From positions 1 to 64,000 of the IMG/VR virus record IMGVR_UViG_3300020165_000007: a DNA stretch of 64,000 nucleotides; one strand, given 5' to 3'. Below, piece by piece: positions 1 through 61,200 of the stretch (position 1 is its first letter; each line of letters begins with the position of its first letter). Both the position numbers and the translations under genes were made by a program. The notes beneath the pieces are model-generated. The model saw only the letters and a program-made list of their open reading frames with translations, ran no database searches and was not told the DNA's origin.

Positions 1-688
1 CTGAACTACCTGACGTTCCACTACTTCCTGAAGAACCTGACGTTCCACTACTTCCTGAAGAACCTGATTCTCCACTTGAACCTGAAGAACCTGATGTTCC
101 ACTACTTCCTGAAGAACCTGATGTTCCACTACTTCCTGAAGAACCTGATTCTCCACTTGAACCTGAAGAACCTGATGTTCCACTACTTCCTGAAGAACCT
201 GATGTTCCTGACGAACCTGAACTACCTGATTCTCCACTTGAACCTGATGAACCTGATGTCCCACTACTTCCTGAAGAGCCTGACGTTCCTGAAGAACCGC
301 TACTTCCGCTAGTTCCTGATGAACCTGATGTTCCACTAGAACCTGACGTTCCTGATTGTCCCGTTCTTATCCATTGAGTACCATCGGTTTGAAGTTGGAT
401 GGATTGTAAAGGTGTTAGTACTATATCATCTTGTGATAAGTCAATTAGTGTATCATCATCTGTACCAATAATTAGATTACTAGTTTCTGATAAATTTTTA
501 AATATATATAACTTACCTGTTAAAGTAGTCGCAGATGCCGGAATAGTTACCACAATGTTGGTACTACCGCTCGCTACAATACTGTAATCATCATCTAAAA
601 GAATATAATCACCGTCCTCATTTCTAATAGGTAACGTTATATCACCTTTAGAAACTAAACCATTCCTTATTACAAGTTCATTTGCCAT
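1..688 (-). CDS. GSS/GTS collagen-like fibre protein, partial (runs off the left edge; absent from the ORF track)
   Basis: ATG at 688 gives MANELVIRNGLVSKGDITLPI...LQSIQLQTDGTQWIRTGQSGTSGSSG..., a paralogue of the 755..4960 N-terminus, followed by Gly-X-X repeats up to the edge. Confidence 0.85.
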   Translation of the reverse strand, partial: MANELVIRNGLVSKGDITLPIRNEDGDYILLDDDYSIVASGSTNIVVTIPASATTLTGKLYIFKNLSETSNLIIGTDDDTLIDLSQDDIVLTPLQSIQLQTDGTQWIRTGQSGTSGSSGTSGSSGTSGSSGSSGTSGSSGSSGTSGSSGSSGESGSSGSSGTSGSSGSSGTSGSSGSSGESGSSGSSGTSGSSGSSGTSGSSGSSGESGSSGSSGTSGSSGSSGTSGSS

Positions 689-47700: not shown

Positions 47701-48388
47701 GAATGTCCGATAACATTGCATATGTTCGACTTATAAAATTGGTACTGATTTTATAGTTACCTGAAGATGGTTCAAATCTAGCGTTAAAATCTTTTAACAT
47801 TAACTCATACCTAATAGCCTTACCATAGTATCCTTTAAGTGTTAATGTAAATAATGGATATGGGAACTGAAAGAATGCACTATACGGTGAGTTTTCTCCT
47901 TGTTCAAATAGAACTCTTCCTTGCACATCCTCCATTTCAATACTAACTATAGCAGCAAAAGACGCATTAACTTTAACTGAAATATTAGTAATTCCTAACA
48001 TTTGACTGTCAGCGTCCCCACCTCTATTTTGACCTAAAGTTAAATTATCAGTCCATGAGGTATCTAAGTAATCGTCTTGCGTTTGAGATTGACCATTATT
48101 AACGGTCTGAGGTTTCATAAAATTTATAACAGTAGACTTATCTTGGTCTAACGCCCCTATTCGTATATTTTCAATAGTATCCTGAAAATTACTACCCACA
48201 ACTAATTTACTTCTAGGTATAACTTTAGTCTCTAAATTAGCGTACATAACTAACTCTTCTTGGTTGATTAACCGTTCAGATACTGTACCATCACTATCAA
48301 CAACTTTATTTGGGTCTATAATTATTATGTTGTCATAGTCTGTTTCTACATATACGTCTTGATTGTTAAAAAATTTGTTACCTGCCAT
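41774..48388 (-). CDS. Very large baseplate hub protein (gp27/VgrG/gpD-like), 2204 aa
   Basis: C-terminal SYTCQVQSLGNVMIQPTMYFNL...GPYYIMNVNHSIS..GFTTNFEGVR resembles the hub signature; follows the LysM/gp53-like gene. Confidence 0.65.
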   Translation of the reverse strand: MAGNKFFNNQDVYVETDYDNIIIIDPNKVVDSDGTVSERLINQEELVMYANLETKVIPRSKLVVGSNFQDTIENIRIGALDQDKSTVINFMKPQTVNNGQSQTQDDYLDTSWTDNLTLGQNRGGDADSQMLGITNISVKVNASFAAIVSIEMEDVQGRVLFEQGENSPYSAFFQFPYPLFTLTLKGYYGKAIRYELMLKDFNARFEPSSGNYKISTNFISRTYAMLSDIPIEALFALPHMYSRTTTIGTNKTSSQPGLDTQELRQIKSTKGYDTIKEVYSAYKAKGLIEDNFPELTINQMLMKLQNFERYVMEAYGKEDMSPLTEIQKYSNTITEYRNQIYGLFTDNWFSENISNRLGLIDRTPNSPILYPIKNNGGKNEKLQKRKDSISNLESIIKKYNTILNENPVFGTNGSVKVNGKKIETSLNCDIKISDFKKQKPTESEVDYNNTYELRYKGTPTELELSDFKNNVIIKELAVPPTVVNAETLTVEEDSLLNQYIVFGDQNNSNNLTKNSFLRKLEELQDNFETKKQQVEETISYALAEKIKSPDVGLGFNPTINNVMAVICASADGFLRLMDKVHDDAWDKRKDPIRVGAIMSPEKSEGTETTMVNALLNGLSAYGTEKEDSPTIYPWPQYFVTSIDEDGNELYEDKYPGDSSEVNKVQGWKYSVWPEIQFVEEFVKGSVQIENQTLGFNYPNELKENPFISCNAIEFPFQGQPYNDLRIVSFFYELFERTFLNSNYTKLYRESGYNNELYSVFSDFEYINLQESVVKSPELIELLKNFSFSYENLLKYMRSISNNGQGQSWNLFNRGDFTTPYIKSLINQDFGVYKLSYLEGNSIRVSSSSESSDKLIKYLNSNQSDELTFTDGYPFNNLTWLQNNLSEGSKVNSIRISNDTSKMFSFNEDQKTIASFSNEDETYDKKMFSYFEWITNTSTSPNQEVSEINPNPNSNSENIFETNNQVINYYNNRTKEKFIITESTLEYGNNYDTTKNFITKTQTTSLLNTPYFTNAILKGVENEKNEIENPYVALGYLYLNSLPLTTLKEKFKSYNNNVTTDLNYIFATLNKFSSVHKVPYYWILKYGSIWHRYKEYKESGVDILDDVWKDFDYKFAYDPIGGDTSKSYTFEDYGGNNVTIKQLEEVSGTIVEDISPIPNEVLNITYPYVTKKVENGFYPKVINELYYYFTKKDIFTSYTSDEIQTAQTEKNLKIGNSDNGSIDKIISSGDTRGQYNMNSWSQYFNIKGNYDFRENQEDKILIIPSFGDVKFNQAEFECFNNQGKYKQNLTTNNSIYNGSVRSFWASSNFGYFSNEMVNKPTPLQYIKNIDPENKNTQPFNISNSDTLQYSSIDDIFGVFTKEMLDNFESYFLNFCEVDTKYNINKVNRGETTFEKFVELSMGPVEIDNERILELERIYNNIPSTFNGLNVNGYNINLSTVMKSLFIIDKPTITNNIDEDLKNISDGQLTTFLNYHIEKALYREVVLKIGNPGKYDNKVYGSITTVSNQMIKDPYDFKTYIPNSLPTQSGSTTLGESRGNYTDAWNSMYLNVGEFSEVGFKYSDNGSYLTDFFVDMDYEFNESNVVNLSSLIKIYAAKKSQDNTYNKSKFIKDLNDALIGKEKFQQNILNNIFIKLNRQLPSVSVTDDALRISKIDGNVPKLELWKSFQLLNDKWVSGQDFKTRTIFEDFLFLDRANRPIGDKIVINIKELEGYLRGRNDKTTVYSLLGTIYEKNNFVFMPTPAYTNFYGRDDRVKKGEPFPQDIPNDLFGTFMEVDARNSRPKMLGIWMGPPSENLGMEQNKNIRKGNDSFDITNPSDCPLRENQQNKDNYSDSNRCVGFQVDFGKRNQGVFNSVSIDMNQHKNIGPTFGVLEQLGAQASGQKVAQQTQSLYNFYKSRSYTCQVQSLGNVMIQPTMYFNLTNVPMFYGPYYIMNVNHSISTRGFTTNFEGVRMPKYSFPKPDKLVASVNRELLGLYQKKLRSIEVNNPSGKTNNTIALSESKNVSQVPEEKCKSLTKYSDKTFVDMTPTTVNGQEVKEYVNNNQFTNNKLKFFIYGIATHNLPVRQNVYNNNLMDLVTSREIKPTQRTQYFNSQTCIIVNEQTFPIASFSSIKDSLDFMRATFNPLGSILEAMDNELQQTQTTNTTPKALAYLYLAQIYEIEPIQGTPQQIIAIIKTKINGNTQYKDEYQEWLDIFTSVVSRGDI

Positions 48389-48695
48389 AATAGAAGAAGT
48401 GAGTGTCTAATGCCTTTTTATAATCTTGTAAAGAATTTACCAAAGGAAAGGGTATAATTAAAACTGACCCGTCACTAATGTTGTTTTCCAACCCACCATA
48501 TTTTGGGTTAGCCATTAATATTAACCAACCAAAATAAGGAGTACCATAAAATTCTTGGCTTAATTTATCTAACCTACTCTGTGTCACTTTATAAATAAAT
48601 TTTTTATCTGTGGGTTTTGCAGGTAATGACACAAACGGTACAACCGTTTGTTTTCCGTTGATTAAGAAGTCTTGATATCTGTCGTAGTATCTCAT
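48378..48695 (-). CDS. LysM-like baseplate wedge protein (gp53/gpX-like)
   Basis: RLDKLSQEFYG.P..GWLILMANP...G.VLIIP. Confidence 0.8.
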   Translation of the reverse strand: MRYYDRYQDFLINGKQTVVPFVSLPAKPTDKKFIYKVTQSRLDKLSQEFYGTPYFGWLILMANPKYGGLENNISDGSVLIIPFPLVNSLQDYKKALDTHFFYYGR

Positions 48696-51600
48696 TAGTT
48701 AAATGTATATTTTCCGTTAAATTCTAAGTCTGTCCCTGAGTTTATACCATCAGTAAATATTGTATTAAAATAAAACACTTGATTGCTGTCAGCCTGCGAT
48801 TGTGGTTTTTGTATGTACGTAAAGTTTCTTTCTTTTTCTAAATTAAATGGATTATACAATGTAAATTTCTGAGAGAATCCAAACTTTAAAGAAGATATTT
48901 CTAGGTCGGACGAACGTTTTAATTCTTTATATACGTCAACCAATCCTGACTGTCCATCAATCGTTATCGGGTCTTGTCCGTCAAGTGATTCTGATGTGTT
49001 AGGGATTATTAACGTATCAAAACCGTATAGAATTTCATTTATATATTTTACCCAATCCTCTTTAAGTATAAGCTCTTCACCTAAAATTGTTTTTTTAACA
49101 GATTCAGGGTCATTTAATATGTTAAAATACGATGCAGTGCAAAATCTTGTTTGTGGTTCAGTATCATAGTCTTCAGATAAAAACCCTTGATAAAGGTTGT
49201 CTTTCCTTGGGTATTTTCCAAGTTCATCATCAAATAGAATATTATAGAACGCCTCTAAATCTCCCGCAACTGTTTGTATGTCCGCAATCATTTCTAAATT
49301 TGTATTTGCCTGTGATGATGATGGGTCAACAGTACTACTACCTGAGAGTTCAAAAATATCTATACTTCCTGTTTTATTTTTATACCCATCCGTATTTGCC
49401 GTAATTAAATTTGAAATATCGTTTTGTCTAACAAAATCGGTCTGAACATTTAATAAGTCCGTAATTTTACTGTTAAAAATACTTTGAAATACTCCCATCC
49501 TTAGATTAATAAAAGATTTTAGATTTTTTTTGAATTTTTTAACATCGCTGTTTTTGAAGTTTTGTTTGTCAATATTAGTAAATGGACTCTTTAAGAAAGG
49601 ATTTAAATTGTTATCAATATCTTCTATTAATTTAGTTTTAAGGTCGGATTCTTTATCTTGTAGTTTAATTGGTTTACCAAAAATTCTTGTAGTAAATCCA
49701 TCGGAACCGCTTAGGTATCCAGTTGAAGTTCCATTGGTATAGAGTCTATCTTGTGTGAAGTAACACACACCAATCTTAGATTGTAATCTGCTTATTGTTT
49801 CTAAAGAACTAATTACATTTTGTACATATGCCTGAGATTTTAAAACATAATCTTTCATAAATGATTTATAGTTAATATCACCCGTTAAAAAATCTTCAAC
49901 CTCTGTAGACGTTACCTGTCCTATAGTTTCGCCAGCCTCTTCGGTCCTTTCAACTTTCCCGTCTTTAACTGTAAAGTTACTATTCGCCTCTATTTTATCT
50001 AACTCGGACCTATCCAAATCTGTAGTATCTTCTGTAGGTACTGAACGTTCATCATATATTTCAGTATTACCAAAATAATTAAATGAAACCGCATTTTGTA
50101 ATCTACTAACAGGTTCTTTAAGACCTTGTCCCCCTATAAAATTAAATGACATATTTATATCGGCAATCATTGGTTGAACTCCTATACCTTCCGGATTTAA
50201 ATCAAACGTTAATGGTTCATAATTAATACTCATTTGTTGTATAACAATTTTAGTATGATAAAAATCACCTATTCTTAATATACAAATAGGTGGTGAACCA
50301 AACGCAGTATTTTTTATATCTCCCTGTCTAGGTTTACCGTCTTCACCTATTACCGGTATTGTGTCTCCGGGTCTTAAACATTGTTGTAAAAAAGTAAGAC
50401 GTGAGTTTAGTCCTTCAGGTGTTATTGAGTGAAATGTCGGATGAAAAAAACTAAGTTTATCTTTTATTCCTTGATATACTTGTGGTGAGTCCTCTTTCAT
50501 TTTGTTGAAGTAGTCGCACTCGGTTAGTAATTTTTTGACTATTATCTTAGCAACATTTCTTTTTTCTCTCACTTCTTTGGCTTCTATTTGTCTTTGAACT
50601 TCCGTCTTACCTGTAACGGTTTCAGTTATAATTGTTTCTTCAATAATAGGCTCTAAGTCTTGTGGATTGGGTTCTGGTGGAATTTCCTCAATTGTAGTAG
50701 CAAAGGAAACCGCTCTACACCCCATAGCTGCTGTGGAATATATTTTGTCAGCTCCTGTTAATTCTTCACTACACGAAACACCATTAATATTTGTGTTTTC
50801 ACCTACGGTCACTTCAATAATATTTAACTTATCTTGATGCTTGTCTAAATCTGAAAAACTTAAAATATATTTTTTTACTGAGTCTACCCTTCTTTTACTT
50901 AAGGATAAATTGTACGCATCACTATTAGGTGAAGAGGCGGAACCCTCTAATTTTATATTAACTATAGCTCCCTTATCAATCGCTTCTTTTATTTTAACAC
51001 ATAATTCTTTTGTTTTTTGTTCAATATTAAAAATATTTTCTTGGAAGAATACTCCAGTAGGTTCTTTTTGGTCCTCATCGGCGTATGTATAATAATTCGC
51101 TTGATTAAGAATATATGCGGATAAATTAGACGAGTAAGACTCTTCGGTGGTGGTTGAGTTTGCGTTTTGGGGGCCAGGAACATCATTGTCAAAGTAGAAC
51201 GAATAACTATAATCATTTGTAGTTATTATGGGTGTATATTCTTCAATGACGGGCTCTGTGGTTGTTATCTGAGTGCTTTGTATTTCATTTTGAAAATATT
51301 CATAGTCAGTGACATTTTGTGTTGTAGTCACAATATCATATATATCTTTAAGAGTAAACTGAGGAAACCTCTGAGCTAATTCGTAAATATCATATTTTCT
51401 ACATCCTGCAAAGAACGAATCAACAATATCATTTATCTTTTGGTTGTCTTTCCCGTCTAATTCTTTATCGACTATAGCGTTCAATATTGATGGGTGGTCA
51501 ACAACTATCTTCCAGTTTAAATTACCCTGTCTAGTCGTGTAATTATATGTGTAAATGGGTTCAGGTCTTCCTAAAAATTGATTTGTAGTCCAGTCAGCAC

Positions 51601-53452
51601 TATTTTGTTCACTTACTTTCATATCATATGGTGGGAACCACATAATTCTACCACCGTTCGGACCTCTTTCACATGAAGGTAAATCTTGTACTGTAAAACC
51701 AGGTTTAGAGGATGTTCTCCAAGCTAAATTTTCTATCGAAAACATGTACTTTTTTACCTTTCCGTCTTGAATATTAGTTGATTCATTACCTCTCCAAGGT
51801 GCGATATTTAAATTATAGGTATTATCCAGTACTGAATATGTGAATTTTCTATTTTTTGTTGTTATACCCTCACTTTTTTGTAATTCATCGTTACTAAAGT
51901 ACGGCATATCTTTAGTGAAAACTCTACAATACTCTATTCCTTTAATTTCACCAGTACTTAAGTCTTCGTATTTAAAAACTGTTGAGCCTTTTGTAATCTC
52001 GCGAGTACCGTCATTAAATACTTTTGATACTTGATTTATTGCAGTACCAACGTGTTGTAACCTTGCGTCTCCTTGTAACCCTTCTGCAGAGTTAATTAAC
52101 CTTTGTGTGTCGTCTAATATAGACCCTTGAGTAAAGGTGTATTGTGTTGATACACCCGCATCAAATGATGACCTAATACTCGATGGTGCTTTCTGCGTTT
52201 TCTTTTCAAACCTATCCGTTTCAAAATTACTGTCGAAATTGGTATTATCTATATTTCCCCCTATACCTACAAATTTTCCCGCAGATTTTACACCGTCTAA
52301 ACTAGTCCATGTAAATCCTCCTTGTAATCTAGGTGCGTCATAATTACTATTGGTTTTGGTGTTAGACCTTAAAAATTTACTTCCGTTTAATCCAAATTTA
52401 AAATCGTTTGGTCCGTCTTTGGTTTCATATAATTTGGCAATTTCACCATACCCCCTTACTGCGGTTCTTACCTTATTACCAAATTGGTCTGTGGGTAATT
52501 CACCTGCCGGAGCGACCATATCAGTTAATTCTTGTTCTTTACTCCCTACGTAGTAATTTCCGGCGGGAGCTCGTAACCCAAAACTTCTACTATTTTCGGT
52601 ATAGTCAGGCGCAAAAACATTTAATGATATACTCTTAAATAATCTTTTAGTTTGTCCCCTACCTGTATTTGATATGAATGTGTCAGACGACTTTTTATTG
52701 GCTTGTGGAAGTAATGTACCTCTACTACTGAATTCACCTTTATTACCTGAAGCCTGATTAATACTAGATTGTTGAGCCACTTCACCAAAATAACTTCCTG
52801 GTATCCATGAGTATGGTGAGTATATTCCAGAAATTCTACTTATAAAATCTAAACCTTTACCTACTATGTTATTTGGAACAGAAATTTTCCAGTCACTTTC
52901 AATTAATTGTTCATTTCCAGTCGCAATGGCTAACACATCAAAAGGGTCTCCTAACGCATCAAGTATATTTACCCTACCAAGTGTTTGTTGATAGGTTTCT
53001 TCCGCAACTCTAAATTGAAATTGTGTTTTTAGTTGGTTTCCTGCTATTTGAGCTAATGTAGAATCTTGTGCTAGTCTTCCGTTGGAACCCATAGGGTCTA
53101 AAGTTGTCAGTAGAGTAAGTGAGTTGTACGTTGAAGCAACAAACGTATAGTACGTCTCTCGTTGTTCTATTTTTCTTTCTATATCTCTAATGTTTATTAA
53201 ATCATTGAATCCACCTTCAGGTCCATATTGATTTTGTATAAACGCTCTTTTTTGTGCTTGGTCAGTTACTTGAGACTCTTCGATTCTAATGGCATCTAAA
53301 ACTGCGACATCGTTAATTGAGAACTCCGAATTACCCGGTGAATCATTACCTTTATAACCTTCAGCATATGGTTCTAAATTCCTTACTAAAAGTTTTTTTC
53401 TAAAACCTTCAGTAGCGCTAAACGTTAATTGACTATTTGATTGGTTCGCCAT
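48695..53452 (-). CDS. Tail-tube initiator-like protein with inserted OmpA-like domain, 1585 aa
   Basis: W....FLGRPEPIYTY..T.R and PPICILRIGDF...I..MSINYE segments; internal LEGSASS..SDAYNLSLSKRRVDSVKKY; lies between tape measure and LysM genes. Confidence 0.6.
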   Translation of the reverse strand: MANQSNSQLTFSATEGFRKKLLVRNLEPYAEGYKGNDSPGNSEFSINDVAVLDAIRIEESQVTDQAQKRAFIQNQYGPEGGFNDLINIRDIERKIEQRETYYTFVASTYNSLTLLTTLDPMGSNGRLAQDSTLAQIAGNQLKTQFQFRVAEETYQQTLGRVNILDALGDPFDVLAIATGNEQLIESDWKISVPNNIVGKGLDFISRISGIYSPYSWIPGSYFGEVAQQSSINQASGNKGEFSSRGTLLPQANKKSSDTFISNTGRGQTKRLFKSISLNVFAPDYTENSRSFGLRAPAGNYYVGSKEQELTDMVAPAGELPTDQFGNKVRTAVRGYGEIAKLYETKDGPNDFKFGLNGSKFLRSNTKTNSNYDAPRLQGGFTWTSLDGVKSAGKFVGIGGNIDNTNFDSNFETDRFEKKTQKAPSSIRSSFDAGVSTQYTFTQGSILDDTQRLINSAEGLQGDARLQHVGTAINQVSKVFNDGTREITKGSTVFKYEDLSTGEIKGIEYCRVFTKDMPYFSNDELQKSEGITTKNRKFTYSVLDNTYNLNIAPWRGNESTNIQDGKVKKYMFSIENLAWRTSSKPGFTVQDLPSCERGPNGGRIMWFPPYDMKVSEQNSADWTTNQFLGRPEPIYTYNYTTRQGNLNWKIVVDHPSILNAIVDKELDGKDNQKINDIVDSFFAGCRKYDIYELAQRFPQFTLKDIYDIVTTTQNVTDYEYFQNEIQSTQITTTEPVIEEYTPIITTNDYSYSFYFDNDVPGPQNANSTTTEESYSSNLSAYILNQANYYTYADEDQKEPTGVFFQENIFNIEQKTKELCVKIKEAIDKGAIVNIKLEGSASSPNSDAYNLSLSKRRVDSVKKYILSFSDLDKHQDKLNIIEVTVGENTNINGVSCSEELTGADKIYSTAAMGCRAVSFATTIEEIPPEPNPQDLEPIIEETIITETVTGKTEVQRQIEAKEVREKRNVAKIIVKKLLTECDYFNKMKEDSPQVYQGIKDKLSFFHPTFHSITPEGLNSRLTFLQQCLRPGDTIPVIGEDGKPRQGDIKNTAFGSPPICILRIGDFYHTKIVIQQMSINYEPLTFDLNPEGIGVQPMIADINMSFNFIGGQGLKEPVSRLQNAVSFNYFGNTEIYDERSVPTEDTTDLDRSELDKIEANSNFTVKDGKVERTEEAGETIGQVTSTEVEDFLTGDINYKSFMKDYVLKSQAYVQNVISSLETISRLQSKIGVCYFTQDRLYTNGTSTGYLSGSDGFTTRIFGKPIKLQDKESDLKTKLIEDIDNNLNPFLKSPFTNIDKQNFKNSDVKKFKKNLKSFINLRMGVFQSIFNSKITDLLNVQTDFVRQNDISNLITANTDGYKNKTGSIDIFELSGSSTVDPSSSQANTNLEMIADIQTVAGDLEAFYNILFDDELGKYPRKDNLYQGFLSEDYDTEPQTRFCTASYFNILNDPESVKKTILGEELILKEDWVKYINEILYGFDTLIIPNTSESLDGQDPITIDGQSGLVDVYKELKRSSDLEISSLKFGFSQKFTLYNPFNLEKERNFTYIQKPQSQADSNQVFYFNTIFTDGINSGTDLEFNGKYTFN

Positions 53453-53491: not shown

Positions 53492-55585
53492 TTAAGCGGA
53501 ATATGTATTATTAGAATCGGTAAGTATTGTCATTAGTTTACTTGTAAAAGTAGGGTTATTAACAATTTCATTTGCCAATTGTTCAGATGATATGTTTTGT
53601 GGGAGATTTCTTCCGTCAACCGATAAATCTATTTTACCACCCACATTTAGATTAATTTCACCATTAACATTATTGCCGGTGTCGTCCATATTTTCTAATA
53701 AACTAGTTCCACCAATTATTATATCATCTTTCAAGAATCTTTGAACGGGCATTCCAGGTCTAGAAATAAAATCCTGATTCACAGGTGAGGTTGTGTCTGC
53801 AGATGTGTCAGGTGTTCCGGCAGCCGCATCGTCTATATTTTCACCCAAAAACATAGCAGCATTTGTAGCTAAATCACCAACTATATCACTAAAATTACCA
53901 AATAGTGTTTTGGCTGTAGTAAGTTGAGATAAAACACTATCAGGTATTAAACCTTCCATTTTAGTTTTAAATTCTGTAAGTCCACTCTCAGTTGATTGAT
54001 ATGCTGCGGTTATAAAATTCTCAACACTAAGACCAGAATCTTTCATTAAGTTAGTTTCGGGTAACTTATCATTCATATCTATAAGTGACGTCTCAATCGC
54101 GGTTCCAAATGTAGATGAAATGTTAAATGCGGCATTTTTAAAATGTTTTCTTGCTTCTTCATCTTGAAATCCTTCAGCGATATTCTGAGTTAACGCGTTT
54201 CCATAAATTTTTAAATTTTCTTCATTAATAGAGGCGTCTAAACCTTCCCTAACAACTTCAGCGTAAGCATCTAAACCACCTAAAGCATCAATCACTCCAT
54301 CAGTTTTTACACCCACTAAAGTAGTTGCCGACTTAGCGCTTTGATTGGCCCCCGCAATTTCTTGAAGTGCTGTAAGTTGTTCCATAGCGATTTCTCTATC
54401 GCTCATTTCATTCTTACTTTGTTGCTCTTTTAACGCCTTAAAATCATCTTGATTTAAATCTGCTGCCGATTTAATTGCGGGAATCATCTTTTTAGTCGCC
54501 TCATCAAAAGTAGGTATGGACACTTTTAAGTCACCTCCCTCAATTGTACTCATATTTGCAACTAGTTCTTTAAACTCTTCAGGAACTGTGGCCGTTCCCA
54601 ACATATCTAATTTTTTTGTTCTTTCAGCGGCTTTAAATGCGGTTTGAGTCATATCTTGGTAGGACATTCCAGCTAAATTAGCCGCCTCTCTTAGTCGATA
54701 CATTTCCGTAACAGGTATATCAAACTCACCAGTTTCCTCATTAAATACTGCAGCACTTTCAGCCATACCAACAACCGCATCCATCAATCCTTCAGTGTCT
54801 GTCTGAGCTAAATGTAGTAATTTAAATGGGTCACCTAAATCTCCTACAGCACCTCCCAACATCTGAAATCCGGCTGCAGTTTCTATTGCCGTTTCAGGGT
54901 CAAGTAACTTTTCAGAAAGTGAAAACGTTTGGGATACGTCCATCCTTAACGCTTGTGCCTTCGCCACCATACGAGAAAATCCTTCTACACCATCTTTAAA
55001 ATTGTAACTAGATAACATTTTTATGTTACTACCTATATCTTTCATAAACTTACCAACATTAATACCATAATCCCTGGCTTGTTTTTGCATGTCACTAATT
55101 TTTGAGATTGCATCTGATGTACCTACACCAATATTTCTAAATCCTTCAACAATTGGGACTATCTCAGCAGATGTAAGTCCAGCGTTACGTGCTAAGAGTT
55201 GCATATTTTCAACTTGCTCAGAAGATAGTAAAGTATTAACCCCCATTACATCATTTATTTGTTGTATTAAAATTAAGTTCTCTTCTAATCCAACTCCAAA
55301 TTTAGTAGTTTCAAATGTGGCTTCAGCCATAGTGGTCATTAACGCATTACCAATCGCACTAGTTTGTCCCATGGACTTAGTAGTTAGATTAAATGTTAGT
55401 TCTTGTAATTTAGCAGTATCTTCTATTACTGATGTCGGCATAATCATCCTCGCTAAACTTGAGGTTATATTTAATACCGTTGTATCTAAAAGTCCGGCGG
55501 CTTTATTTAAGCCGTCCATACCTTTACTAATATCGTTTATCGCGTTTTTAGCGTTATCTGCCGCTTCTCCAATTTTGTTAGCCAT
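53492..55585 (-). CDS. Tape measure protein, 697 aa
   Basis: Ala/Met/Leu-rich helical protein in the canonical position after the tube and chaperones. Confidence 0.7.
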   Translation of the reverse strand: MANKIGEAADNAKNAINDISKGMDGLNKAAGLLDTTVLNITSSLARMIMPTSVIEDTAKLQELTFNLTTKSMGQTSAIGNALMTTMAEATFETTKFGVGLEENLILIQQINDVMGVNTLLSSEQVENMQLLARNAGLTSAEIVPIVEGFRNIGVGTSDAISKISDMQKQARDYGINVGKFMKDIGSNIKMLSSYNFKDGVEGFSRMVAKAQALRMDVSQTFSLSEKLLDPETAIETAAGFQMLGGAVGDLGDPFKLLHLAQTDTEGLMDAVVGMAESAAVFNEETGEFDIPVTEMYRLREAANLAGMSYQDMTQTAFKAAERTKKLDMLGTATVPEEFKELVANMSTIEGGDLKVSIPTFDEATKKMIPAIKSAADLNQDDFKALKEQQSKNEMSDREIAMEQLTALQEIAGANQSAKSATTLVGVKTDGVIDALGGLDAYAEVVREGLDASINEENLKIYGNALTQNIAEGFQDEEARKHFKNAAFNISSTFGTAIETSLIDMNDKLPETNLMKDSGLSVENFITAAYQSTESGLTEFKTKMEGLIPDSVLSQLTTAKTLFGNFSDIVGDLATNAAMFLGENIDDAAAGTPDTSADTTSPVNQDFISRPGMPVQRFLKDDIIIGGTSLLENMDDTGNNVNGEINLNVGGKIDLSVDGRNLPQNISSEQLANEIVNNPTFTSKLMTILTDSNNTYSA

Positions 55586-55609: not shown

Positions 55610-55802
55610 TTATCTTTTAGATTTTACTTTTTCGGACTGTTGTTTTCGTTTATCAAATTCCTCAACTAACTTTCCTATAAAGTATTTTCTTTCGTATGTA
55701 GGCATATTAATTAAGTCGTTATAAGAAAAATTTGCATGACGAGTTAAGTAATATATTTCATCAAGCACAGATACCCTAGATTCAGAAGAAAGGCCGAAAA
55801 AA
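55610..55802 (-). CDS. Tail chaperone C-terminal extension (probably made by frameshift)
   Basis: EIYYL....FSYNDLINMPTYERKYFI resembles tail-chaperone second ORFs; no ATG near its start; overlaps the upstream gene in the +1 frame. Confidence 0.65.
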
Positions 55803-56537
55803 CTCCACCCCAAAGGTGACTCTAACTGTCAACTCTTCTCCTGACGGGGCGTTTAAACTCCTTTCTAAGTCTAATTTTGGTTCCGAATTAGAAAGGCTAT
55901 TTCTTATGAATTTAGAATCCATAATTGGTAATTTTATGACGAAGCTTGTTATAAACTCTCTATCGGTGTTGTTGTCTACACTTACTATTTGTTTTGATAA
56001 CCTATTGGTTACTATGGGGGCCGTAACATTGTTTGGGTACTTCTCTAACATATCGTTAAGTTCCTGTACTTCTCCTACCGTAAGTAGTTTACATTTTACC
56101 ATATTTCCTGACTTAGGTAGTTTAAATGTAAATGTCCCGTCTTCTTCGGGTTCTTTTTCAAGTTTTTTGAAATTTAGCTCATCGAGACGAACCGTATGTT
56201 CAAATGAATTATTAGTTTTAGGGTCTCTTAATGTAAAATTATAATCGGGACCAAACGCTGTGTTTCTCAAAAATATTAAAATAGCCTCTAAATCACCTTC
56301 TAATAAGTCATTAACCTTAACGTCTGGTTCATATATCTTATTTTTAACTAAATCATTTATAATGTTTGGATTTTTACCGTTTCCGGCAGATACCAAAATA
56401 TTTTCATCCTGAGCTGTCAGATATCCAATTTTAAGACTCTTTTTTTTGTTTTTATAAAACTTACCCTGCGAGGGAAGTGTTACCACGTCATGTGGTAAAT
56501 TAAAGTCTTGTTGTCCATATTGTTTCGCTTCGTCCAT
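55782..56537 (-). CDS. Tail/baseplate assembly chaperone (T4 gp26-like), 251 aa
   Basis: VTLPSQGKFY, YLTAQDENIL, GDLEAILIFLR..AFG.DY, ends EFFRP; lies between tube and tape measure. Confidence 0.75.
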   Translation of the reverse strand: MDEAKQYGQQDFNLPHDVVTLPSQGKFYKNKKKSLKIGYLTAQDENILVSAGNGKNPNIINDLVKNKIYEPDVKVNDLLEGDLEAILIFLRNTAFGPDYNFTLRDPKTNNSFEHTVRLDELNFKKLEKEPEEDGTFTFKLPKSGNMVKCKLLTVGEVQELNDMLEKYPNNVTAPIVTNRLSKQIVSVDNNTDREFITSFVIKLPIMDSKFIRNSLSNSEPKLDLERSLNAPSGEELTVRVTFGVEFFRPFF

Positions 56538-56554
56538 ATTTTTGTGTAAAAAAA

Positions 56555-56580
56555 AACCATAGGGAATAAACCCTATGGTT
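56555..56580 (-). terminator. Intrinsic terminator after the tail tube gene
   Basis: AACCATAGGG-AATAAA-CCCTATGGTT followed by a long T-run on the minus strand. Confidence 0.75.
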
Positions 56581-56614
56581 AATTATATAAACTATTATTT
56601 TTTTTTCAATAGTA

Positions 56615-57103
56615 TTAGTAAACCAAAATACATCTATCAGGACGTAATGTCGCTGTAATTGTTGCCAATGCGTCATCACTATATCCCAAACTATCAAAAT
56701 TAACATCAGTTAAGAAAGTACCCTGTAGAATCCATTTTTCAACCGCAACTCCTGTAGGGTCTAACATTTCAAGGTCTAGGTCTTTCTTATAACCAGCTGC
56801 GTATCCCATACGACCTGTAACGGACTCTGAGGTTAATCTTACCCATTCCATTAAGGCTTGTGCTGCCGATGGTCCTATGGGGTCTCTAAACGTCACGTTT
56901 ATCGTATTCCAAGTAAATCTACCAGCAACATAAGTAGATGTGTTTAAGAAAGGAATCTCAGTTGCGTTAATTTGGACGTTAGGTCTAGATGTGGACTCAA
57001 CATACCAAGAGTTAATACCCAATGATGAAGGAAAACTTAGAACAAATCTATTTTTTCTTTTCGGTTCATACGGTACGGGCATTTTCATTAATAAATCAGC
57101 CAT
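56615..57103 (-). CDS. Tail tube protein (gp19-like)
   Basis: EPKRKNRF, YVAGRFTWNTINVTFRD, YKKD..L..LDP.G..VEKW.L.G.F. Confidence 0.88.
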   Translation of the reverse strand: MADLLMKMPVPYEPKRKNRFVLSFPSSLGINSWYVESTSRPNVQINATEIPFLNTSTYVAGRFTWNTINVTFRDPIGPSAAQALMEWVRLTSESVTGRMGYAAGYKKDLDLEMLDPTGVAVEKWILQGTFLTDVNFDSLGYSDDALATITATLRPDRCILVY

Positions 57104-57224
57104 TGTATTTTGGTTTTAAATTTCGTTGTTTATTTTATTATAAATATCAGTGTTAAACTTTTTTCTCTTTACTTTTACTTTTTTAATTGTAAAATCCTTA
57201 ACTAGAGATTAGAAACTAGAATTT

Positions 57225-58076
57225 TTAAACTTCTTTTTTTTCTCCTCCTTTAGTTAAATAAGTTTTTACTGGGCTTTCATCTTTATATTCTTTATCTAAA
57301 AATGTTTTTATAGATTCTATATTTCCTGGGTCGTCATCAGAAAATCCTATTTGAGGTACAAAGTTATTACTCACATCATTAGTAAATGATACTTTTTGAC
57401 CTAATTTTTTACTTTGGTATTTAACGTAATTAATAAACTCTCTTAACGCTTTTATCTTACCTTCCTCCGGATTAGAGGCCGACCCCTCACCATAAGTAAC
57501 AGGATAATATTTATTCATATCTAAATATTCTTTTATTAAAAGTTGGTCGTCTTTCATAAGTTCTCCTGATAAATCCCGATATTTTTTTAAGTTTTCTACT
57601 AACTTACTTGAGTCTATTCCATTGTGGTTTGTAACAATAAGGTTATAAATAGAGTCTCTTAACACTGACGGAGTGTGACCTCTAGCAGTAATAATTGCAA
57701 ATATAGAACCTCCGTTAATACATTCCACAAAATCATTCCATGAAGGACCTGGAGAAGCTAATAAAGAGTCCACTATAAATTTCTTATCACCATCTACTCC
57801 AAAATTACGATAGGGATTTTCGGAATAACCTACAACAGTCTCATTATTATATTCAAAAGGCTCCACACCAATCTTTTGTCGATATTCGGCAAAATCTTCA
57901 GTAGACATACCTATCTCATTACCTTCATCAGTTTTTAAAATTATTCGAGTCGGCATAACGACAATATTATCATCCCAGTCAAAAGCATAATACTTTAAGT
58001 CAGGTTGACCGTCTTCGATACCTTCACTTATAAATAATTTATTAAGACTTTGATGTATAATACTTCTTAGACTCAT
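57225..58076 (-). CDS. HAD-superfamily phosphatase-like protein
   Basis: Motif I AFDWDDNI, motif II ITARGH, Lys (EEGK), motif IV FSDDD..N. Confidence 0.75.
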   Translation of the reverse strand: MSLRSIIHQSLNKLFISEGIEDGQPDLKYYAFDWDDNIVVMPTRIILKTDEGNEIGMSTEDFAEYRQKIGVEPFEYNNETVVGYSENPYRNFGVDGDKKFIVDSLLASPGPSWNDFVECINGGSIFAIITARGHTPSVLRDSIYNLIVTNHNGIDSSKLVENLKKYRDLSGELMKDDQLLIKEYLDMNKYYPVTYGEGSASNPEEGKIKALREFINYVKYQSKKLGQKVSFTNDVSNNFVPQIGFSDDDPGNIESIKTFLDKEYKDESPVKTYLTKGGEKKEV

Positions 58077-58081
58077 GTATT

Positions 58082-58219
58082 TTAATTATTTAGATTTTCA
58101 ATTAATCTCTCTAATTGTGATTCCGTCAAAACAATATTTTGAGGTTTTTCAGAATAGGTCTTAACTCCATTACCATTAATTTGTAATGACTCTCTTAGTA
58201 ATTTTTTTTTAAATTCCAT
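58082..58219 (-). CDS. Small 45-aa protein (not in ORF track)
   Basis: MEFKKKLLRESLQINGNGVKTYSEKPQNIVLTESQLERLIENLNN; A-rich 5' context; stop 5 nt before the next ATG. Confidence 0.65.
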   Translation of the reverse strand: MEFKKKLLRESLQINGNGVKTYSEKPQNIVLTESQLERLIENLNN

Positions 58220-58255
58220 TTTTTTATTTTATTAAACGTTTAATTATATGGCTAA

Positions 58256-58285
58256 AAATGGGGGATACTTTTGTACCCCCCATTT
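58256..58285 (-). terminator. Hairpin after the tail sheath gene
   Basis: AAATGGGGG...CCCCCATTT inverted repeat with T-run. Confidence 0.6.
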
Positions 58286-58293
58286 AATAAATA

Positions 58294-61200
58294 TCAGATA
58301 TCCTCAAATGATGCACCTGTCGGAGTAATTAAGAATTCTATATCGATGAATTCTAACGCTCTTGTTGGTTTTAGATATATTTTACCTACTAAGGTGTTAT
58401 TATCTAAATCTTCAGGAGTGTTCTGAACGACAACTCTAAAGTCAATCAAACCTCTATCTCTTCTGATAGAATCTAAGATTGGGTTTACTGAGTCCAAGAA
58501 TTCTTGTCTTACTTGGTCATCATTCTGTTCGAACAATAGTCTTACCGCTACTGCTGAAATCAACTTACGAGCTTGTAATAACAATCTTCTAACATTGATT
58601 CTGTCGAGTGCTGACTGTTTAACTTGAGTAGTTTTATTACCCCATATTACTGTACCAACATCTGAGAAAGTTGCGATTGGGTTGATTCTACCTTTATATA
58701 GAATGTCTCTATCATCTTGAGTTAACTTCTTACGAGCTTTAATACCATTTACTAAACCTCTTGTATAACCCGCGGATGCGAACCATGGGAATGATATATT
58801 ATCTGTTAACGCTAAGTTTCTAACAACTTCAGCGGTAGGTGGTAAGTAAATCTGTGTGTTATTAACAGTATCTCTTGTAAGAATCCATGGGTAATAAGTT
58901 GCAGTATAGTTAGAGTCAATTCCAGTATCTTCTAAGTTTTCGGTCGCTTCTTGTGGGTAAATAAAGTCAGTTGTAAAATTAGACGTAGTATTAACAAACA
59001 TGTTATAGTCAGGTGTGGTACAGATATAAATTGAGTCCGCTCTATCCGTTTCAATCATATCAATCGCCTCCTCTACTAAGTTTGAGTTATTAACATAATC
59101 TATACCTGAAGTAGTAAACACATTAATATTTACAGCTTCAGGGTTAACAAAAGTCCACTGACCCCATAAGTAAGCATAATAGTCAGTATTACCCCAATCT
59201 TGTTTATCTGGACCAACAATTGTTTTAAACGCCCCCCATCCTGTTGCACTTGGGAATCTAACTGATGGTGCCGCTCCACGTAGATATCCATTATTACCTA
59301 ATATAAATGTATCTCCATTAGTACGAGACTCTCGATAGATATCCCATCCATCAAATCCTCCAGTAGGAACTAATGTAAATTTACGAGAATTTAATCTGTA
59401 ATATGGACTATCTTCGTTAGGTTCACTATCGAATGATGCGTCACCAACCTCAAACGCAGTTTCACCCGAAGTTACATACTGAGATGGGATTAGAACTACA
59501 GTCGCTCCTGAGTCCATATGATATCCTTTTGTTAATTCCGCCCACGGAGATGACTCAGTAGCGGTAGATAAGTTAGTCGGATTTTGTTTACCCTTATAAG
59601 AGGTAAAGTCGACATCAATACCGACAGTATTCGATACACCTAAGAAAACTCTTCTTGGGTTATCGCCCGCACTTCTTGTTAAGTTATCTCCATTAGAAGA
59701 CCCAAAAGGAGGGTTAAATAACACCTCACCTGGAGTATCATACTTAGTCTTATAAAGTAGGTGTGGTGATTTATAACTACTGTACTGTCGAGTTTGGTAA
59801 CCTTTAAAACCACAAGGTAATGAATCGGACGGAGCCTCTTCATTTACTTCTAACATAATATATCTTGACTTTAACTCAAAATCTCCATTAGCTGTACCGA
59901 TTTTTTTAGCCACATAACTATTAAGATTTATATCCATGGTACAGTTTGTGAATTTTTCTAATACGATTGGGTTAGAATCGGTATCATAAAAACTTCTAAC
60001 AACAACGTCAAAGGTTAGGTTATTAAATGATATATTCATTATAGAGACTTTAATCTCTCTGTTCGCCGAGTTACCGTCTGAGATTGAAATAACTTTAAAT
60101 AAGTCGGAAACTTCATTACCTCTTAATTCTGAAACTAAATATGGTGTAGAGGGGGTTTGATACCTATCTAAGTACCATCCGATACCTGTATTATCAACAT
60201 CTTCTCTCGCACTTTGTAATCCTAATAAAGTAGTATTTAATCCTCTAATCTTACCTTCTTTGTATCCTGTATTTAATAAGTTATAATAAATTTCCTCGAC
60301 AAATAATGGAATTTCATTACTTGGTTTAGAAAAATTACTTTGACCTAACACTTTACTTATAAAGTTAGGGTCACTTAAAGAAAGTGATGTGTTGAACGTA
60401 AATATCTCTGAGTCGTTTGTTATACCTGAAATTTGGAAATTAGAGAATGGATTATTAGTTATTCCTGAATATACTCCTGTAGAGTTAATTGTTACATTGG
60501 TTAATCCTGAAACTTCGTAATCGGGATTATTAGAATTACTAGTTGTTGATATCCCTCTTGACCTTAGTGTACTAACAACCATATTATGGTAATCAGTGAT
60601 TGGTGTTCCTGTATATGTGGTAGTATATACAACACCCACACCTGTATAATTGTTACCTACAGTATTTGTTAATCCTGTGATAGACAATCCAAAACCGACA
60701 CCACTGTATTCACCTGTACCACTATTATATGGGAATAAAGCGTAATACCATGAATCATTTTCAGACGCTTCAAAATCTGCGGTATCAATGGTAAGACCAT
60801 CCACACCCAATACGTTAGTTGTACCTGTCCATGTTCCCGAAGCTCCAGTTATTGCGTCATAAGTTTCGCCACTAACAGTACCAAACATAAATGATGTGGC
60901 TCCTGAACTGACGGGGTTAACAATACTTTGATAAACCGCAGATTCAAAGTTGCCCTGTAATGTTGATATATTACCTGAAAATGTTGTATAAGGTAATCCG
61001 AACACACTTTCTATAGATGAAGGTAAGTTACTAAAATCAGTAATTTCAGTTGAACTACTATTACCTGATACACCACTAAAAGTTATTGTATAAGCAATTC
61101 CGTCAGAATCTTTAGGAGTAATTAATGATTTATTTACGTTACCCACCGTTGATATTGACCATGATGGTCCAGCATCGTATCCTGATAAACCTAAGACACG

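What the first reader, a model, noticed from the sequence alone, without database searches (positions are those of the whole stretch)
50700..51205. OmpA-like peptidoglycan-binding domain inserted into a tube-initiator-like fold
Seen: FYFDND...IKLEGSASSPNSDAYNLSLSKRRVDSVKKYI...GE...CRAVSF follows the OmpA/MotB C-terminal pattern (F-D, G-x-x-S, N..LS..R...V, R.V). It is flanked by Glu/Thr/Pro linkers and lies between the two tube-like halves (~51650-51490 and ~50295-50130). Inference: the tail tip carries a cell-wall-binding module that could anchor the tube in the periplasm after contraction.
Basis: partly seen in the sequence, partly recalled or inferred. Interest (0 to 1): 0.6.

Follow-up and report, generated by a model that had tools for sequence, protein, structure and literature searches.

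The report
OmpA-like module inside phage tube-base protein
A giant tail protein of an uncultured 270-kb aquatic phage has a cell-wall-binding-type (OmpA-like) domain spliced into the fold that normally forms the first ring of the tail tube, which suggests these phages tether their tube to the host cell wall, although one of the four classic wall-binding residues is always changed.

Summary
Window 50699-51217 (- strand), aa 746-918 of a 1585-aa protein (48695-53452), is an OmpA-like domain. It passes Pfam's PF00691 cut-off, and its confident AlphaFold model matches solved peptidoglycan-binding domains at Z up to 11.5.

The two flanks together match tail-tube and tube-initiator ring proteins (Z 6-7.7). 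They align collinearly, with the insert removed, to an uninterrupted domain at the end of a giant Microcystis phage Mel-JY01 protein (78%, E 1.8e-5). The OmpA domain therefore sits in a roughly 350-aa insertion, between two poorly conserved Thr/Glu/Ile-rich linkers of about 40 aa.

The gene follows the putative tape-measure gene and precedes a LysM-like gp53-type gene in a T4-like tail module. All 200 relatives examined keep the order half 1, OmpA, half 2.

Of the four DAP-contact residues, Asn, Leu and Arg are (near-)invariant. The Asp is an invariant Ser, so wall binding is plausible but unproven.

A second phage lineage fuses OmpA-like domains to the C-terminal side of the same tube-type domain, again without the Asp.

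Verdict: real, a new variant of a known kind (tail-tip wall-binding modules), moderately interesting. The periplasmic-anchor function is inferred.

The parts
48695..53452 (-). Whole gene, 1585 aa (P0001): giant tail/baseplate protein carrying the split tube-like domain and the OmpA-like insert
   Evidence: ORF. More than 6345 relatives in metagenomes.
51761..53452 (-). N-terminal region, aa 1-564, fold unknown
   Evidence: No Pfam or PHROG match. AF2 model has mean pLDDT 51 and is not usable. Mean pairwise identity 0.56.
51473..51760 (-). Tube-like fold, first half (aa 565-660)
   Evidence: Strands at model residues 25-107. VIA matches span model 1..564. hhalign to the Mel-JY01-like domain gives 88% probability, E 3e-6. 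Mean pairwise identity 0.81.
51341..51472 (-). Start of the insertion: conserved helical segment A (aa 661-704)
   Evidence: Helices in a low-confidence part of the model. Mean pairwise identity 0.65. Has no counterpart in the Mel-JY01-like domain.
51218..51340 (-). Linker 1 (aa 705-745), Thr/Ile/Glu-rich
   Evidence: Composition and mean pairwise identity 0.29. Modelled as a strand paired with linker 2 at low pLDDT.
50699..51217 (-). OmpA-like domain (aa 746-918). It has an extra helical stretch of about 45 aa (aa 757-809) between strand 1 and helix 1. The DAP-contact positions are S840, N848, L851 and R855. C894 and C912 form an invariant Cys pair.
   Evidence: Pfam match. pLDDT 80-92. Z up to 11.5. 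Column counts. Alignment to 3TD3 and others.
50579..50698 (-). Linker 2 (aa 919-958), Glu/Thr/Ile/Pro-rich
   Evidence: Composition and mean pairwise identity 0.22.
50423..50578 (-). End of the insertion: conserved helical segment B (aa 959-1010)
   Evidence: Helices at model residues 423-455. Mean pairwise identity 0.60.
50048..50422 (-). Tube-like fold, second half (aa 1011-1135)
   Evidence: Helix at model residues 468-482 and strands at 512-563. VIA matches. Collinear hhalign to the Mel-JY01-like domain. Mean pairwise identity 0.83.
48695..50047 (-). C-terminal region, aa 1136-1585, fold unknown
   Evidence: Only a weak match to phrog_36407, a family of unknown function. Not folded. Mean pairwise identity 0.35.
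53492..55585 (-). Upstream gene, 697 aa. Candidate tape measure, assigned by position only.
   Evidence: ORF. No family match. It occupies the slot of T4 gene 29 between the gp26-like gene and this gene.
48378..48695 (-). Downstream gene, 105 aa. LysM-like gp53-type baseplate protein. Its start overlaps the stop of the 1585-aa gene.
   Evidence: phrog_7145 'baseplate wedge subunit', E 3.5e-6. Weak Pfam Phage_gp53 match.
55782..61479 (-). Tail module context: gp26-like hub (55782-56537), tail tube (56615-57103), 283-aa ORF (57225-58076), tail sheath (58294-61479)
   Evidence: PF12322, E 2.7e-10. phrog_4542 and phrog_23. phrog_45 match on the genome.

Best explanation
The 1585-aa protein is most likely the ring protein at the baseplate end of the tail tube, the counterpart of tube initiators or caps, in an uncultured 270-kb T4-like ('moraphage'-like) aquatic phage.

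Its tube-like domain is interrupted, between the strands of the first half and the helix of the second half, by an insertion of about 350 aa. The insertion consists of two conserved helical segments and two fast-evolving linkers of about 40 aa each. The linkers hold out an OmpA-like domain.

Proposed mechanism (inferred):
1. The ring displays several OmpA heads on flexible stalks on the outside of the tube's tip.
2. After contraction drives the tip through the outer membrane, the heads bind peptide stems of the peptidoglycan. The pocket keeps Asn848, Leu851 and Arg855 but has Ser840 in place of the canonical Asp.
3. This holds the tube in the cell wall during the long ejection of a very large genome.

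Shown here: the fold, the insertion topology, the gene context, the family-wide conservation and the state of the pocket residues.

Inferred: ring formation, the position of the heads, entry into the periplasm and binding to peptidoglycan.
For: - OmpA fold: Pfam match above the cut-off. Model pLDDT 80-92. Foldseek probability 1.00. VIA Z 11.5 to 8 against Pal, OmpA, OprF, PorE, TagL and MotB.
- Tube fold built from both flanks: matches span model residues 1..564. They are 9ay5_G (P1 tail-baseplate) Z 7.7, 9gtp_P Z 7.5, 9qgl_7A (PVC baseplate) Z 7.4, 9euf_M Z 7.0, 6u5b_h (pyocin R2 baseplate) Z 6.7 and 8kea_P (cyanophage A-1(L) baseplate-initiators) Z 6.4. Dit proteins also match. BFVD hits are named 'contractile injection system tube protein'.
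- Uninterrupted relative: with the insert columns removed, the family aligns collinearly over both halves to the C-terminal domain of the Mel-JY01-like giant proteins (78%, E 1.8e-5; first half alone 88%, E 3e-6).
- Gene order: sheath, tube, gp26-like hub, 697-aa gene, this gene, LysM-like gp53-type gene. This parallels T4's 26-51-27-28-29-48-54. No other gp48- or gp54-like gene was found in the genome, although one search is uninformative.
- Conservation: all 120 database relatives and all 80 IMG/VR relatives (42-93% identity) keep half 1, OmpA, half 2 in that order.
- Most conserved OmpA positions: these are the pocket positions S840, N848, L851, R854 and R855, plus C894 and C912. The four DAP-contact residues of TagL, D486/N494/L497/R501 (PMC8253398), map to S840/N848/L851/R855 with identical spacing.
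- Recurrence: a second lineage fuses OmpA-like domains to the same type of tube domain.
Against: - The canonical Asp that contacts the DAP amino group is an invariant Ser. To my knowledge, mutating this Asp in A. baumannii OmpA abolishes binding.
- The strand 1 to helix 1 loop that lines the pocket carries an extra 45 aa, so the pocket may be remodelled.
- Tube-fold Z-scores of 6-7.7 are in the range the tool itself calls 'middling', and that part of the model has pLDDT 57-79.
- There is no sequence-level link to T4 gp48 or gp54.
- A ring of 1585-aa subunits may be too bulky to travel through the baseplate with the tube. If it stays behind, the heads would stay outside the outer membrane.
- LysM-like folds in baseplates (gp53/gpX type) are generally regarded as structural, so a wall-binding fold in a baseplate need not bind the wall.
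Confidence: 0.45

Rival explanations
1. Structural module. The OmpA-like fold has been re-used as a protein-protein adaptor inside the baseplate, for example clamping the tube-base ring to wedge or hub proteins, and no longer binds the cell wall. This would parallel the LysM-like fold of gp53/gpX-type baseplate proteins.
For: - Invariant loss of the canonical Asp.
- The same loss (Ser or Asn) in the independent C-terminal fusions of the Mel-JY01-like lineage.
- An extra 45-aa elaboration next to the pocket.
- The insertion carries strongly conserved helical segments that look like packing elements.
Against: - The residues under the strongest constraint are those that line the ligand pocket in solved OmpA-like domains, N848, L851 and R855.
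- The module hangs on two fast-evolving, low-complexity linkers (identity 0.22-0.29). This is typical of a tethered, mobile head rather than a fixed structural brick.
- The module can sit either inside or after the tube domain. That is easier to reconcile with a free-standing binding head.
Confidence: 0.3
2. Altered-ligand binder. The module binds an envelope component other than canonical uncross-linked meso-DAP stems. Candidates are a modified or amidated stem peptide, another anionic polymer, or a surface glycan. It could act as an adhesion or trigger sensor at the cell surface or in the periplasm.
For: - The Asp-to-Ser change removes the negative charge that pairs with the DAP amino group, while the Arg that pairs with a carboxylate is kept.
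- Conserved Tyr773, Tyr780 and Tyr787 lie in the extra loop beside the pocket.
- By analogy, siphophage 'evolved Dit' rings carry inserted carbohydrate-binding modules (my knowledge). Dit folds are among the structural matches.
Against: No ligand information at all. The host is unknown (Bacteroidota is only suggested). OmpA-like domains with proven non-peptidoglycan ligands are rare.
Confidence: 0.2
3. Artefact. The arrangement is a chimeric assembly or a mis-called ORF that fuses a host OmpA gene fragment to a phage gene.
For: None beyond the unusual architecture.
Against: The same uninterrupted architecture occurs in more than 6000 protein clusters and in 80 of 80 independent IMG/VR contigs, at 42-93% identity. 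Base composition is uniform across the gene.
Confidence: 0.01

Closest known systems
OmpA/Pal/MotB-type peptidoglycan-binding domains that anchor machines to the wall (T6SS TagL, T9SS PorE, flagellar MotB/PomB, Zorya ZorB)
   Same: Same fold (Z 8-11.5). The Pfam family threshold is passed. The Asn, Leu and Arg that contact DAP are present with the same spacing. The proposed role is the same: tethering a force-bearing nanomachine to the wall.
   Different: The canonical Asp is Ser. There are an extra 45 aa between strand 1 and helix 1. The domain is carried by a phage virion protein, not a host envelope protein. It is inserted inside another domain instead of lying at a C-terminus after a membrane anchor.
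Tube initiators and caps of contractile systems (T4 gp48/gp54; initiators in the PVC, pyocin R2, A-1(L), P1 and phi812 baseplate structures)
   Same: Tube-type fold. The gene lies directly after the putative tape-measure gene and next to a LysM-like small gene. To my knowledge, several initiators or their neighbours (Pvc7/Afp7, gpX, gp53) carry LysM-type wall-binding folds.
   Different: No detectable sequence similarity to gp48 or gp54. The protein is four to five times longer. Its tube domain is split by about 350 aa. It carries an OmpA-type rather than a LysM-type module.
Giant C-terminal tube-domain proteins of Microcystis phage Mel-JY01 and its metagenomic relatives
   Same: They occupy the same slot after a tape-measure-like gene and before a LysM-like gp53-type gene. 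The tube domain is homologous at profile level. Fifteen of 120 also carry an OmpA-like domain that lacks the Asp.
   Different: Their tube domain is uninterrupted and lies at or near the C-terminus. Where OmpA is present, it is appended about 85-110 aa after the tube domain, not inserted. The two sets of OmpA modules do not find each other with HMMs.
'Evolved' distal tail proteins (Dit) of siphophages with inserted carbohydrate-binding modules (my knowledge, not tested here)
   Same: The design principle is the same: a tube-like ring protein at the tail tip with a cell-envelope-binding module inserted into a loop. Dit folds are among the structural matches.
   Different: Those are non-contractile tails of Gram-positive-infecting phages. 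The inserted modules have CBM folds that bind wall polysaccharide, and the insertion site is different.

Membership tests
OmpA family (Pfam PF00691) | Profile score above the curated gathering threshold | tested here: met
   29.2 bits on the whole protein and 32.7 bits on aa 700-960, against 27.2. 34.6 bits in the genome scan.
OmpA family (Pfam PF00691) | Beta-alpha-beta-alpha-beta-beta fold of solved OmpA/Pal/MotB domains | tested here: met
   pLDDT 80-92. Z 11.5, rmsd 2.4 A, 116 of 119 aligned to 5n2c_A, with more than 20 further OmpA-like chains at Z 8 or above or close to it. Foldseek's top 48 hits are all OmpA-like.
OmpA family (Pfam PF00691) | Asn, Leu and Arg of the DAP-binding site (TagL N494/L497/R501; the Arg corresponds to A. 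baumannii OmpA R286) | tested here: met
   N848 in 120 of 121, L851 in 120 of 121, R855 in 121 of 121. Register confirmed by HMMER alignments to 3TD3, 5U1H and 5WTP. Residue roles are from PMC8253398.
OmpA family (Pfam PF00691) | Asp of the GHTD motif that contacts the DAP amino group (TagL D486; A. baumannii OmpA D271) | tested here: not met
   Ser840 in 121 of 121. The 'xxAS' motif appears in 64 of the 68 IMG/VR translations scanned by pattern; 4 missed the strict pattern and 12 of the 80 loci were not retrieved by the ORF filter. All 80 loci carry the domain by HMM.
OmpA family (Pfam PF00691) | Non-covalent binding to peptidoglycan | not testable with these tools
   Needs a sacculus pull-down or muropeptide binding assay.
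Tail-tube-type ring proteins (tube, tube initiator, Dit) | Tube-type beta-sandwich plus helix fold | tested here: met
   About 20 of the top 50 VIA rows are tail tube, initiator or Dit chains spanning model 1..564, with Z 5.7-7.7 and 117-173 residues aligned. BFVD 'tube protein' hits. Scores are moderate, and this part of the model has pLDDT 57-79.
Tail-tube-type ring proteins (tube, tube initiator, Dit) | Gene placed between the tape-measure gene and the hub, LysM or wedge genes | tested here: met
   The order is sheath, tube, gp26-like, 697-aa gene, this gene, gp53-like LysM gene. The 697-aa gene is called a tape measure by position only.
Tail-tube-type ring proteins (tube, tube initiator, Dit) | Forms a ring at the baseplate end of the tube in the virion | not testable with these tools
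   Six copies of even the 596-aa piece exceed the complex predictor's limit of 1000 residues. Needs cryo-EM of a virion.
T4 gp48 (phrog_230) and gp54 (phrog_45) sequence families | Significant profile or sequence match | tested here: not met
   No hit at E up to 10 for either half. hhalign probability below 1%. In the genome, phrog_45 finds only the tube gene. phrog_230 found nothing, but its control also rang nowhere.
'Moraphages' (PMC12619734) | Aquatic phage of 200-307 kb with T4-like gp19, gp25, sheath and gp6 core genes; DnaK in some members | tested here: inconclusive
   The genome record is 270,383 bp and 88% complete. It has gp19-like, sheath and gp25-like genes and a DnaK at 159503-161278. 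No phylogeny or direct comparison with the published genomes was made.

The most novel reading that the evidence does not exclude
Large aquatic myophages have repeatedly recruited a phage-specific, Asp-less (Ser or Asn) variant of the OmpA peptidoglycan-binding domain to the protein that forms the tip-proximal ring of the tail tube. One lineage has it as an internal insertion and another as a C-terminal fusion. The heads would act as a periplasmic 'stator' that locks the ejected tube into the sacculus. Their changed pocket would recognise a stem-peptide state different from the one bound by the host's own OmpA and Pal, and so avoid competition with them.
Probability: 0.25. Interest if true: 0.7.

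Novelty: new variant of a known kind. Interest (0 to 1): 0.5.

Why it matters
How the tube of a contractile phage is held in the envelope while DNA passes is poorly understood, and for very large genomes ejection should take long. A wall-tethering module built into the first tube ring would be a simple answer that can be tested directly.

The protein family is very large: more than 6000 clusters, and contigs up to about 311 kb. None of the paper searches I ran turned up a description of it. Automatic pipelines label the whole 1585-aa tail protein 'outer membrane protein OmpA-like', which is misleading for viromics and for host or auxiliary-gene calls.

The invariant Asp-to-Ser pocket, seen again as Ser or Asn in an independent fusion, is a natural experiment on the ligand specificity of OmpA-like domains.

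Tried and rejected
- tblastn of the whole protein, and of aa 955-1140, against 50,697 phage records: no match. No cultured close relative was found.
- Pfam and PHROG scans of the two tube halves and of the N- and C-terminal regions: nothing usable.
- hhalign of the family profile, and of insert-deleted sub-alignments, against T4 gp48 and gp54: probability below 1%. The same was found for the Mel-JY01-like domain against gp48 and gp54. A hand alignment to the gp48 motif looked suggestive, but it is not statistically supported and I dropped it.
- phrog_230 on the phage's own genome: nothing. The control rang nowhere either, so this is uninformative.
- ESM Atlas look-alikes for aa 1-545 and 1140-1585: no lead.
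- AF2 model of aa 1-562: mean pLDDT 51, not searched.
- Cluster-member look-up for names: none carried a name.
- Five paper searches on OmpA-type or peptidoglycan-binding domains in phage tails, baseplates and marine jumbo phages: no description of this protein. One hit, the Tenacibaculum phage paper, was irrelevant.
Also not used: the reads tools and the complex predictor, because no protein-protein binding claim is made.
Full report
**What is there**

The finding lies in a single long gene, window 48695-53452 on the - strand, encoding 1585 aa (P0001). The window is the first 64 kb of a 270,383-bp IMG/VR virus record that CheckV estimates to be 88% complete. Nearly all long ORFs in the window are on the - strand, and G+C is about 31-36% apart from the first 12 kb.

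Read in the direction of transcription, the neighbourhood is a T4-like contractile-tail module:
- tail sheath, 58294-61479 (phrog_23, E 9e-55)
- a 283-aa ORF
- tail tube, 56615-57103 (phrog_4542, E 8e-30)
- a gp26-like hub protein, 55782-56537 (PF12322, E 2.7e-10)
- a 697-aa protein with no family match, 53492-55585, which I take to be the tape measure from its position only
- the 1585-aa gene
- a 105-aa LysM-like gp53-type protein, 48378-48695 (phrog_7145, E 3.5e-6)
- a 2204-aa protein with no match

A gp25-like gene lies further down at 32340-32819. In T4 the corresponding order is 26-51-27-28-29-48-54. The gene therefore sits where the tube cap and initiator genes sit.

**The observation**

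The quoted motifs are at aa 752 (FYFDND), 833 (IKLEGSAS) and 912 (CRAVSF), which correspond to window about 50702-51199.
- Pfam OmpA (PF00691) is passed: 29.2 bits for the whole protein and 32.7 bits for aa 700-960, against a cut-off of 27.2. The six-frame genome scan gives 34.6 bits.
- An AlphaFold2 model of aa 545-1140, built on 108 family sequences, has pLDDT 80-92 across aa 745-925.
- Foldseek against the PDB returns OmpA, Pal, OprF, PorE, YfiB and TagL peptidoglycan-binding domains as its first 48 hits, most at probability 0.9-1.00.
- VIA-align against 48,161 representative chains gives Z 11.5 (5n2c_A, rmsd 2.4 A, 116 of 119 residues). A long series of OmpA-like domains follows, down to Z about 8.

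A helical stretch of about 45 aa (aa 757-809) separates it from the canonical helix 1. The Pfam alignment instead starts at aa 802.

**The flanks form one tube-like fold**

The same VIA search lists, interleaved with the OmpA hits, about 20 chains that align across model residues 1 to about 564. That range covers both sides of the OmpA domain, with 117-173 residues aligned:

| Chain | Source | Z |
|---|---|---|
| 9ay5_G | phage P1 tail-baseplate | 7.7 |
| 9gtp_P | Streptomyces contractile injection system baseplate | 7.5 |
| 9qgl_7A | PVC baseplate | 7.4 |
| 9euf_M | phi812 baseplate | 7.0 |
| 9g8s_T | phiCD508 | 6.8 |
| 6u5b_h | pyocin R2 baseplate | 6.7 |
| 8v3w_G | diffocin | 6.6 |
| 8kea_P | cyanophage A-1(L) 'baseplate-initiators' | 6.4 |
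| 2wzp_P | lactococcal phage p2 baseplate (taken to be its Dit) | 6.2 |
| 7aeb_M | Algoriphagus contractile injection system | 6.2 |
| 9f4a_BM | Klebsiella phage KP1 baseplate-tube interface (173 aligned) | 5.9 |

Each score alone is 'middling' by the tool's own caveat, and this part of the model has pLDDT 57-79. However, the non-OmpA hits are almost exclusively tail-tube-type ring proteins. BFVD adds proteins named 'contractile injection system tube protein'. I regard the tube-type fold as well supported, and the finer label 'initiator' as supported by gene order only.

At sequence level there is no link to T4 gp48 or gp54. This holds for PHROG and Pfam scans of the halves at E up to 10 and for hhalign.

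**It is an insertion**

An HMM of the family finds one weak hit in Microcystis phage Mel-JY01 (E 1.4e-3). The hit lies near the C-terminus of a 2255-aa protein, which itself follows a tape-measure-like 1348-aa gene and precedes a LysM-like 111-aa gene.

I collected 119 further relatives of that C-terminal domain and compared profiles.
- The first half of our tube fold aligns to it with 88% probability (E 3e-6).
- With the insert columns removed in a script, both halves align collinearly over 105 columns (78%, E 1.8e-5). This step was analysis only, and nothing altered was sent to restricted tools.

In the Mel-JY01-like domain the two halves are contiguous. In our family they are separated by aa about 660-1015.

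The insertion has an ordered anatomy. Mean pairwise identity among 121 family members is as follows:

| Segment | Residues | Mean pairwise identity |
|---|---|---|
| tube half 1 | 565-660 | 0.81 |
| helical segment A | 661-704 | 0.65 |
| linker 1 (Thr/Ile/Glu-rich) | 705-745 | 0.29 |
| OmpA-like domain | 746-918 | 0.40 |
| linker 2 (Glu/Thr/Ile/Pro-rich) | 919-958 | 0.22 |
| helical segment B | 959-1010 | 0.60 |
| tube half 2 | 1011-1135 | 0.83 |

AF2 pairs the two linkers as a long ribbon, but at low confidence.

The insertion point lies between the last strand of half 1 and the helix of half 2. From general knowledge of tube proteins, that helix packs on the outside of the tube ring. The heads would then point outward and not into the lumen. 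This is inference.

**Distribution**

The family is very large. The word search scored more than 6345 clusters at E 1e-3 or better, from JGI, ENA, Logan and Tara data. Members lie on contigs of up to about 311 kb.

In the 120 best database relatives (49-100% identity) and in 80 IMG/VR loci (42-93% identity), every complete protein has half 1, OmpA and half 2 in that order. The arrangement is therefore old and fixed in this lineage, and an assembly artefact is excluded.

The genome also encodes a DnaK. Its size and its T4-like core genes fit the recently described 'moraphages', whose predicted hosts are Flavobacteriia (PMC12619734). I did not test membership. Foldseek's two best PDB hits are OmpA-like domains of Bacteroidota (Capnocytophaga OmpA and P. 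gingivalis PorE), which is only a hint about origin.

**State of the ligand site**

PMC8253398 names the residues of T6SS TagL that contact DAP as Asp486, Asn494, Leu497 and Arg501. It states that DAP is buried between the strand 1-helix 1 loop and the strand 2-helix 2 loop.

HMMER alignments of our family profile to 3TD3, 5U1H, 5WTP and others put GSAS opposite GHTD. This gives S840, N848, L851 and R855 with the same +8, +11 and +15 spacing.

Column counts over 121 sequences:
- S840 in 121
- N848 in 120
- L851 in 120
- R854 and R855 in 121 each

Of the 68 IMG/VR translations scanned by pattern, 64 show 'xxAS' and 4 missed my strict pattern. All 80 loci carry the domain by HMM.

So three of the four contact residues are kept under strong constraint, and the Asp is replaced by an invariant Ser. 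Further (near-)invariant positions are P759, Y773, Y780, Y787, F802, G884, C894, C912 and R913.

The Cys pair brackets the loop before the last strand. To my recollection the disulfide of E. coli OmpA's C-terminal domain is placed in the same way, but I did not test this.

The pattern argues for a functional pocket with altered chemistry. It does not look like a decayed domain, but it does not show peptidoglycan binding.

**A second, independent arrangement**

Among the 120 Mel-JY01-like proteins, 15 carry an OmpA-like domain. Pfam scores were 29-46 bits in the four I scanned. The domain starts about 85-110 aa after the end of the tube domain, behind a Pro/Lys/Glu-rich linker.

At the Asp position the twelve whose motif could be read have Ser (GHAS, GHTS, GNAS, GFCS) or Asn (GHAN). 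HMMs of the two phage OmpA groups do not detect each other. The two groups are either independent acquisitions or very old.

Either way, OmpA-like heads attached to the tube-base protein recur, at different topological positions and always without the Asp. This recurrence is the strongest indirect argument that the head does something on its own. Its simultaneous loss of the Asp is the strongest argument that it does not simply copy host OmpA or Pal.

**Mechanism**

The best-supported reading is a tethered wall-binding head on the first tube ring, used after penetration to hold the tube in the sacculus. My confidence in this is about 0.45. My confidence in the architecture itself is about 0.85.

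Rivals:
- A purely structural adaptor inside the baseplate (0.3).
- A binder of a different envelope ligand (0.2).

One physical difficulty applies to the anchor model. A ring of 1585-aa subunits might not pass through the baseplate with the tube.

**Comparison and novelty**

The closest known things are the following:
- OmpA-type anchors of T6SS, T9SS and flagellar machines. These share the fold and the proposed logic, but have a different carrier and keep the Asp.
- Tube initiators with associated LysM folds. These share the position and have an analogous wall-binding-type fold.
- Siphophage 'evolved Dit' rings with inserted carbohydrate-binding modules. These share the design principle.

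None of the five paper searches I ran turned up a description of an OmpA-like domain in a tail-tube-base protein. Automatic annotation already flags the Pfam domain, but it mislabels the protein as an outer membrane protein.

I rate this a new variant of a known kind, with interest 0.5.

**Limits**

- The N-terminal 564 aa gave a model that cannot be used (pLDDT 51).
- The C-terminal 450 aa were not folded.
- Ring formation, virion location and ligand binding are untested.

Noticed in passing
window 9528-11711 (- strand): A 727-aa ORF consists largely of about 85 tandem copies of the hexapeptide PSITAT (with PSVT variants) between short unique ends. This explains the raised G+C (0.45), the strong GC skew and the long shadow ORF on the + strand (10012-11742).
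   Followed up: partly
proteins P0225, P0226, P0239-P0245, P0250, P0253-P0255, P0257, P0259 (relatives of Microcystis phage Mel-JY01 WWT39329.1; L002:28595-35362): In a second lineage of giant tail proteins, 15 of 120 members carry an OmpA-like domain appended after the C-terminal tube-type domain. Where the motif could be read (12 of 15), the canonical Asp is replaced by Ser or Asn (GHAS, GHTS, GHAN). Mel-JY01 itself lacks the domain.
   Followed up: partly
L002:28595-35362 (Mel-JY01 2255-aa protein, P0122): The middle of this protein is a long array of repeats of about 44 aa (consensus around FDWDGKR..AP.V.FFD; Pfam WDGH PF25311 in relatives), upstream of the tube-type domain.
   Followed up: no
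G000:C1:133958-134086 (- strand; outside the window): A second, sub-threshold OmpA-like match (17.6 bits, E 9e-4) lies in a 478-aa open frame elsewhere in the phage genome.
   Followed up: no
G000:C1:159503-161278 (+ strand; outside the window): The phage encodes a full-length DnaK/HSP70 (843 bits). This trait is reported for some 'moraphages', whose predicted hosts are Flavobacteriia (PMC12619734).
   Followed up: partly
window 48378-48697: The start codon of the 105-aa LysM-like gene overlaps the stop of the 1585-aa gene. The 2204-aa gene (start at 48388) overlaps the end of the 105-aa gene by 11 bases. This tight arrangement is consistent with coupled translation of three baseplate proteins.
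   Followed up: no
window 50714-50772 (aa 894-912 of P0001): Two invariant cysteines (C894 and C912, each 121 of 121) bracket the loop before the last OmpA strand. This may be a disulfide that could only form outside the cytoplasm.
   Followed up: no
window 41774-48388 (- strand): The 2204-aa protein directly downstream has no Pfam or PHROG match at all. By position it could be the hub/spike or an inner baseplate protein.
   Followed up: no
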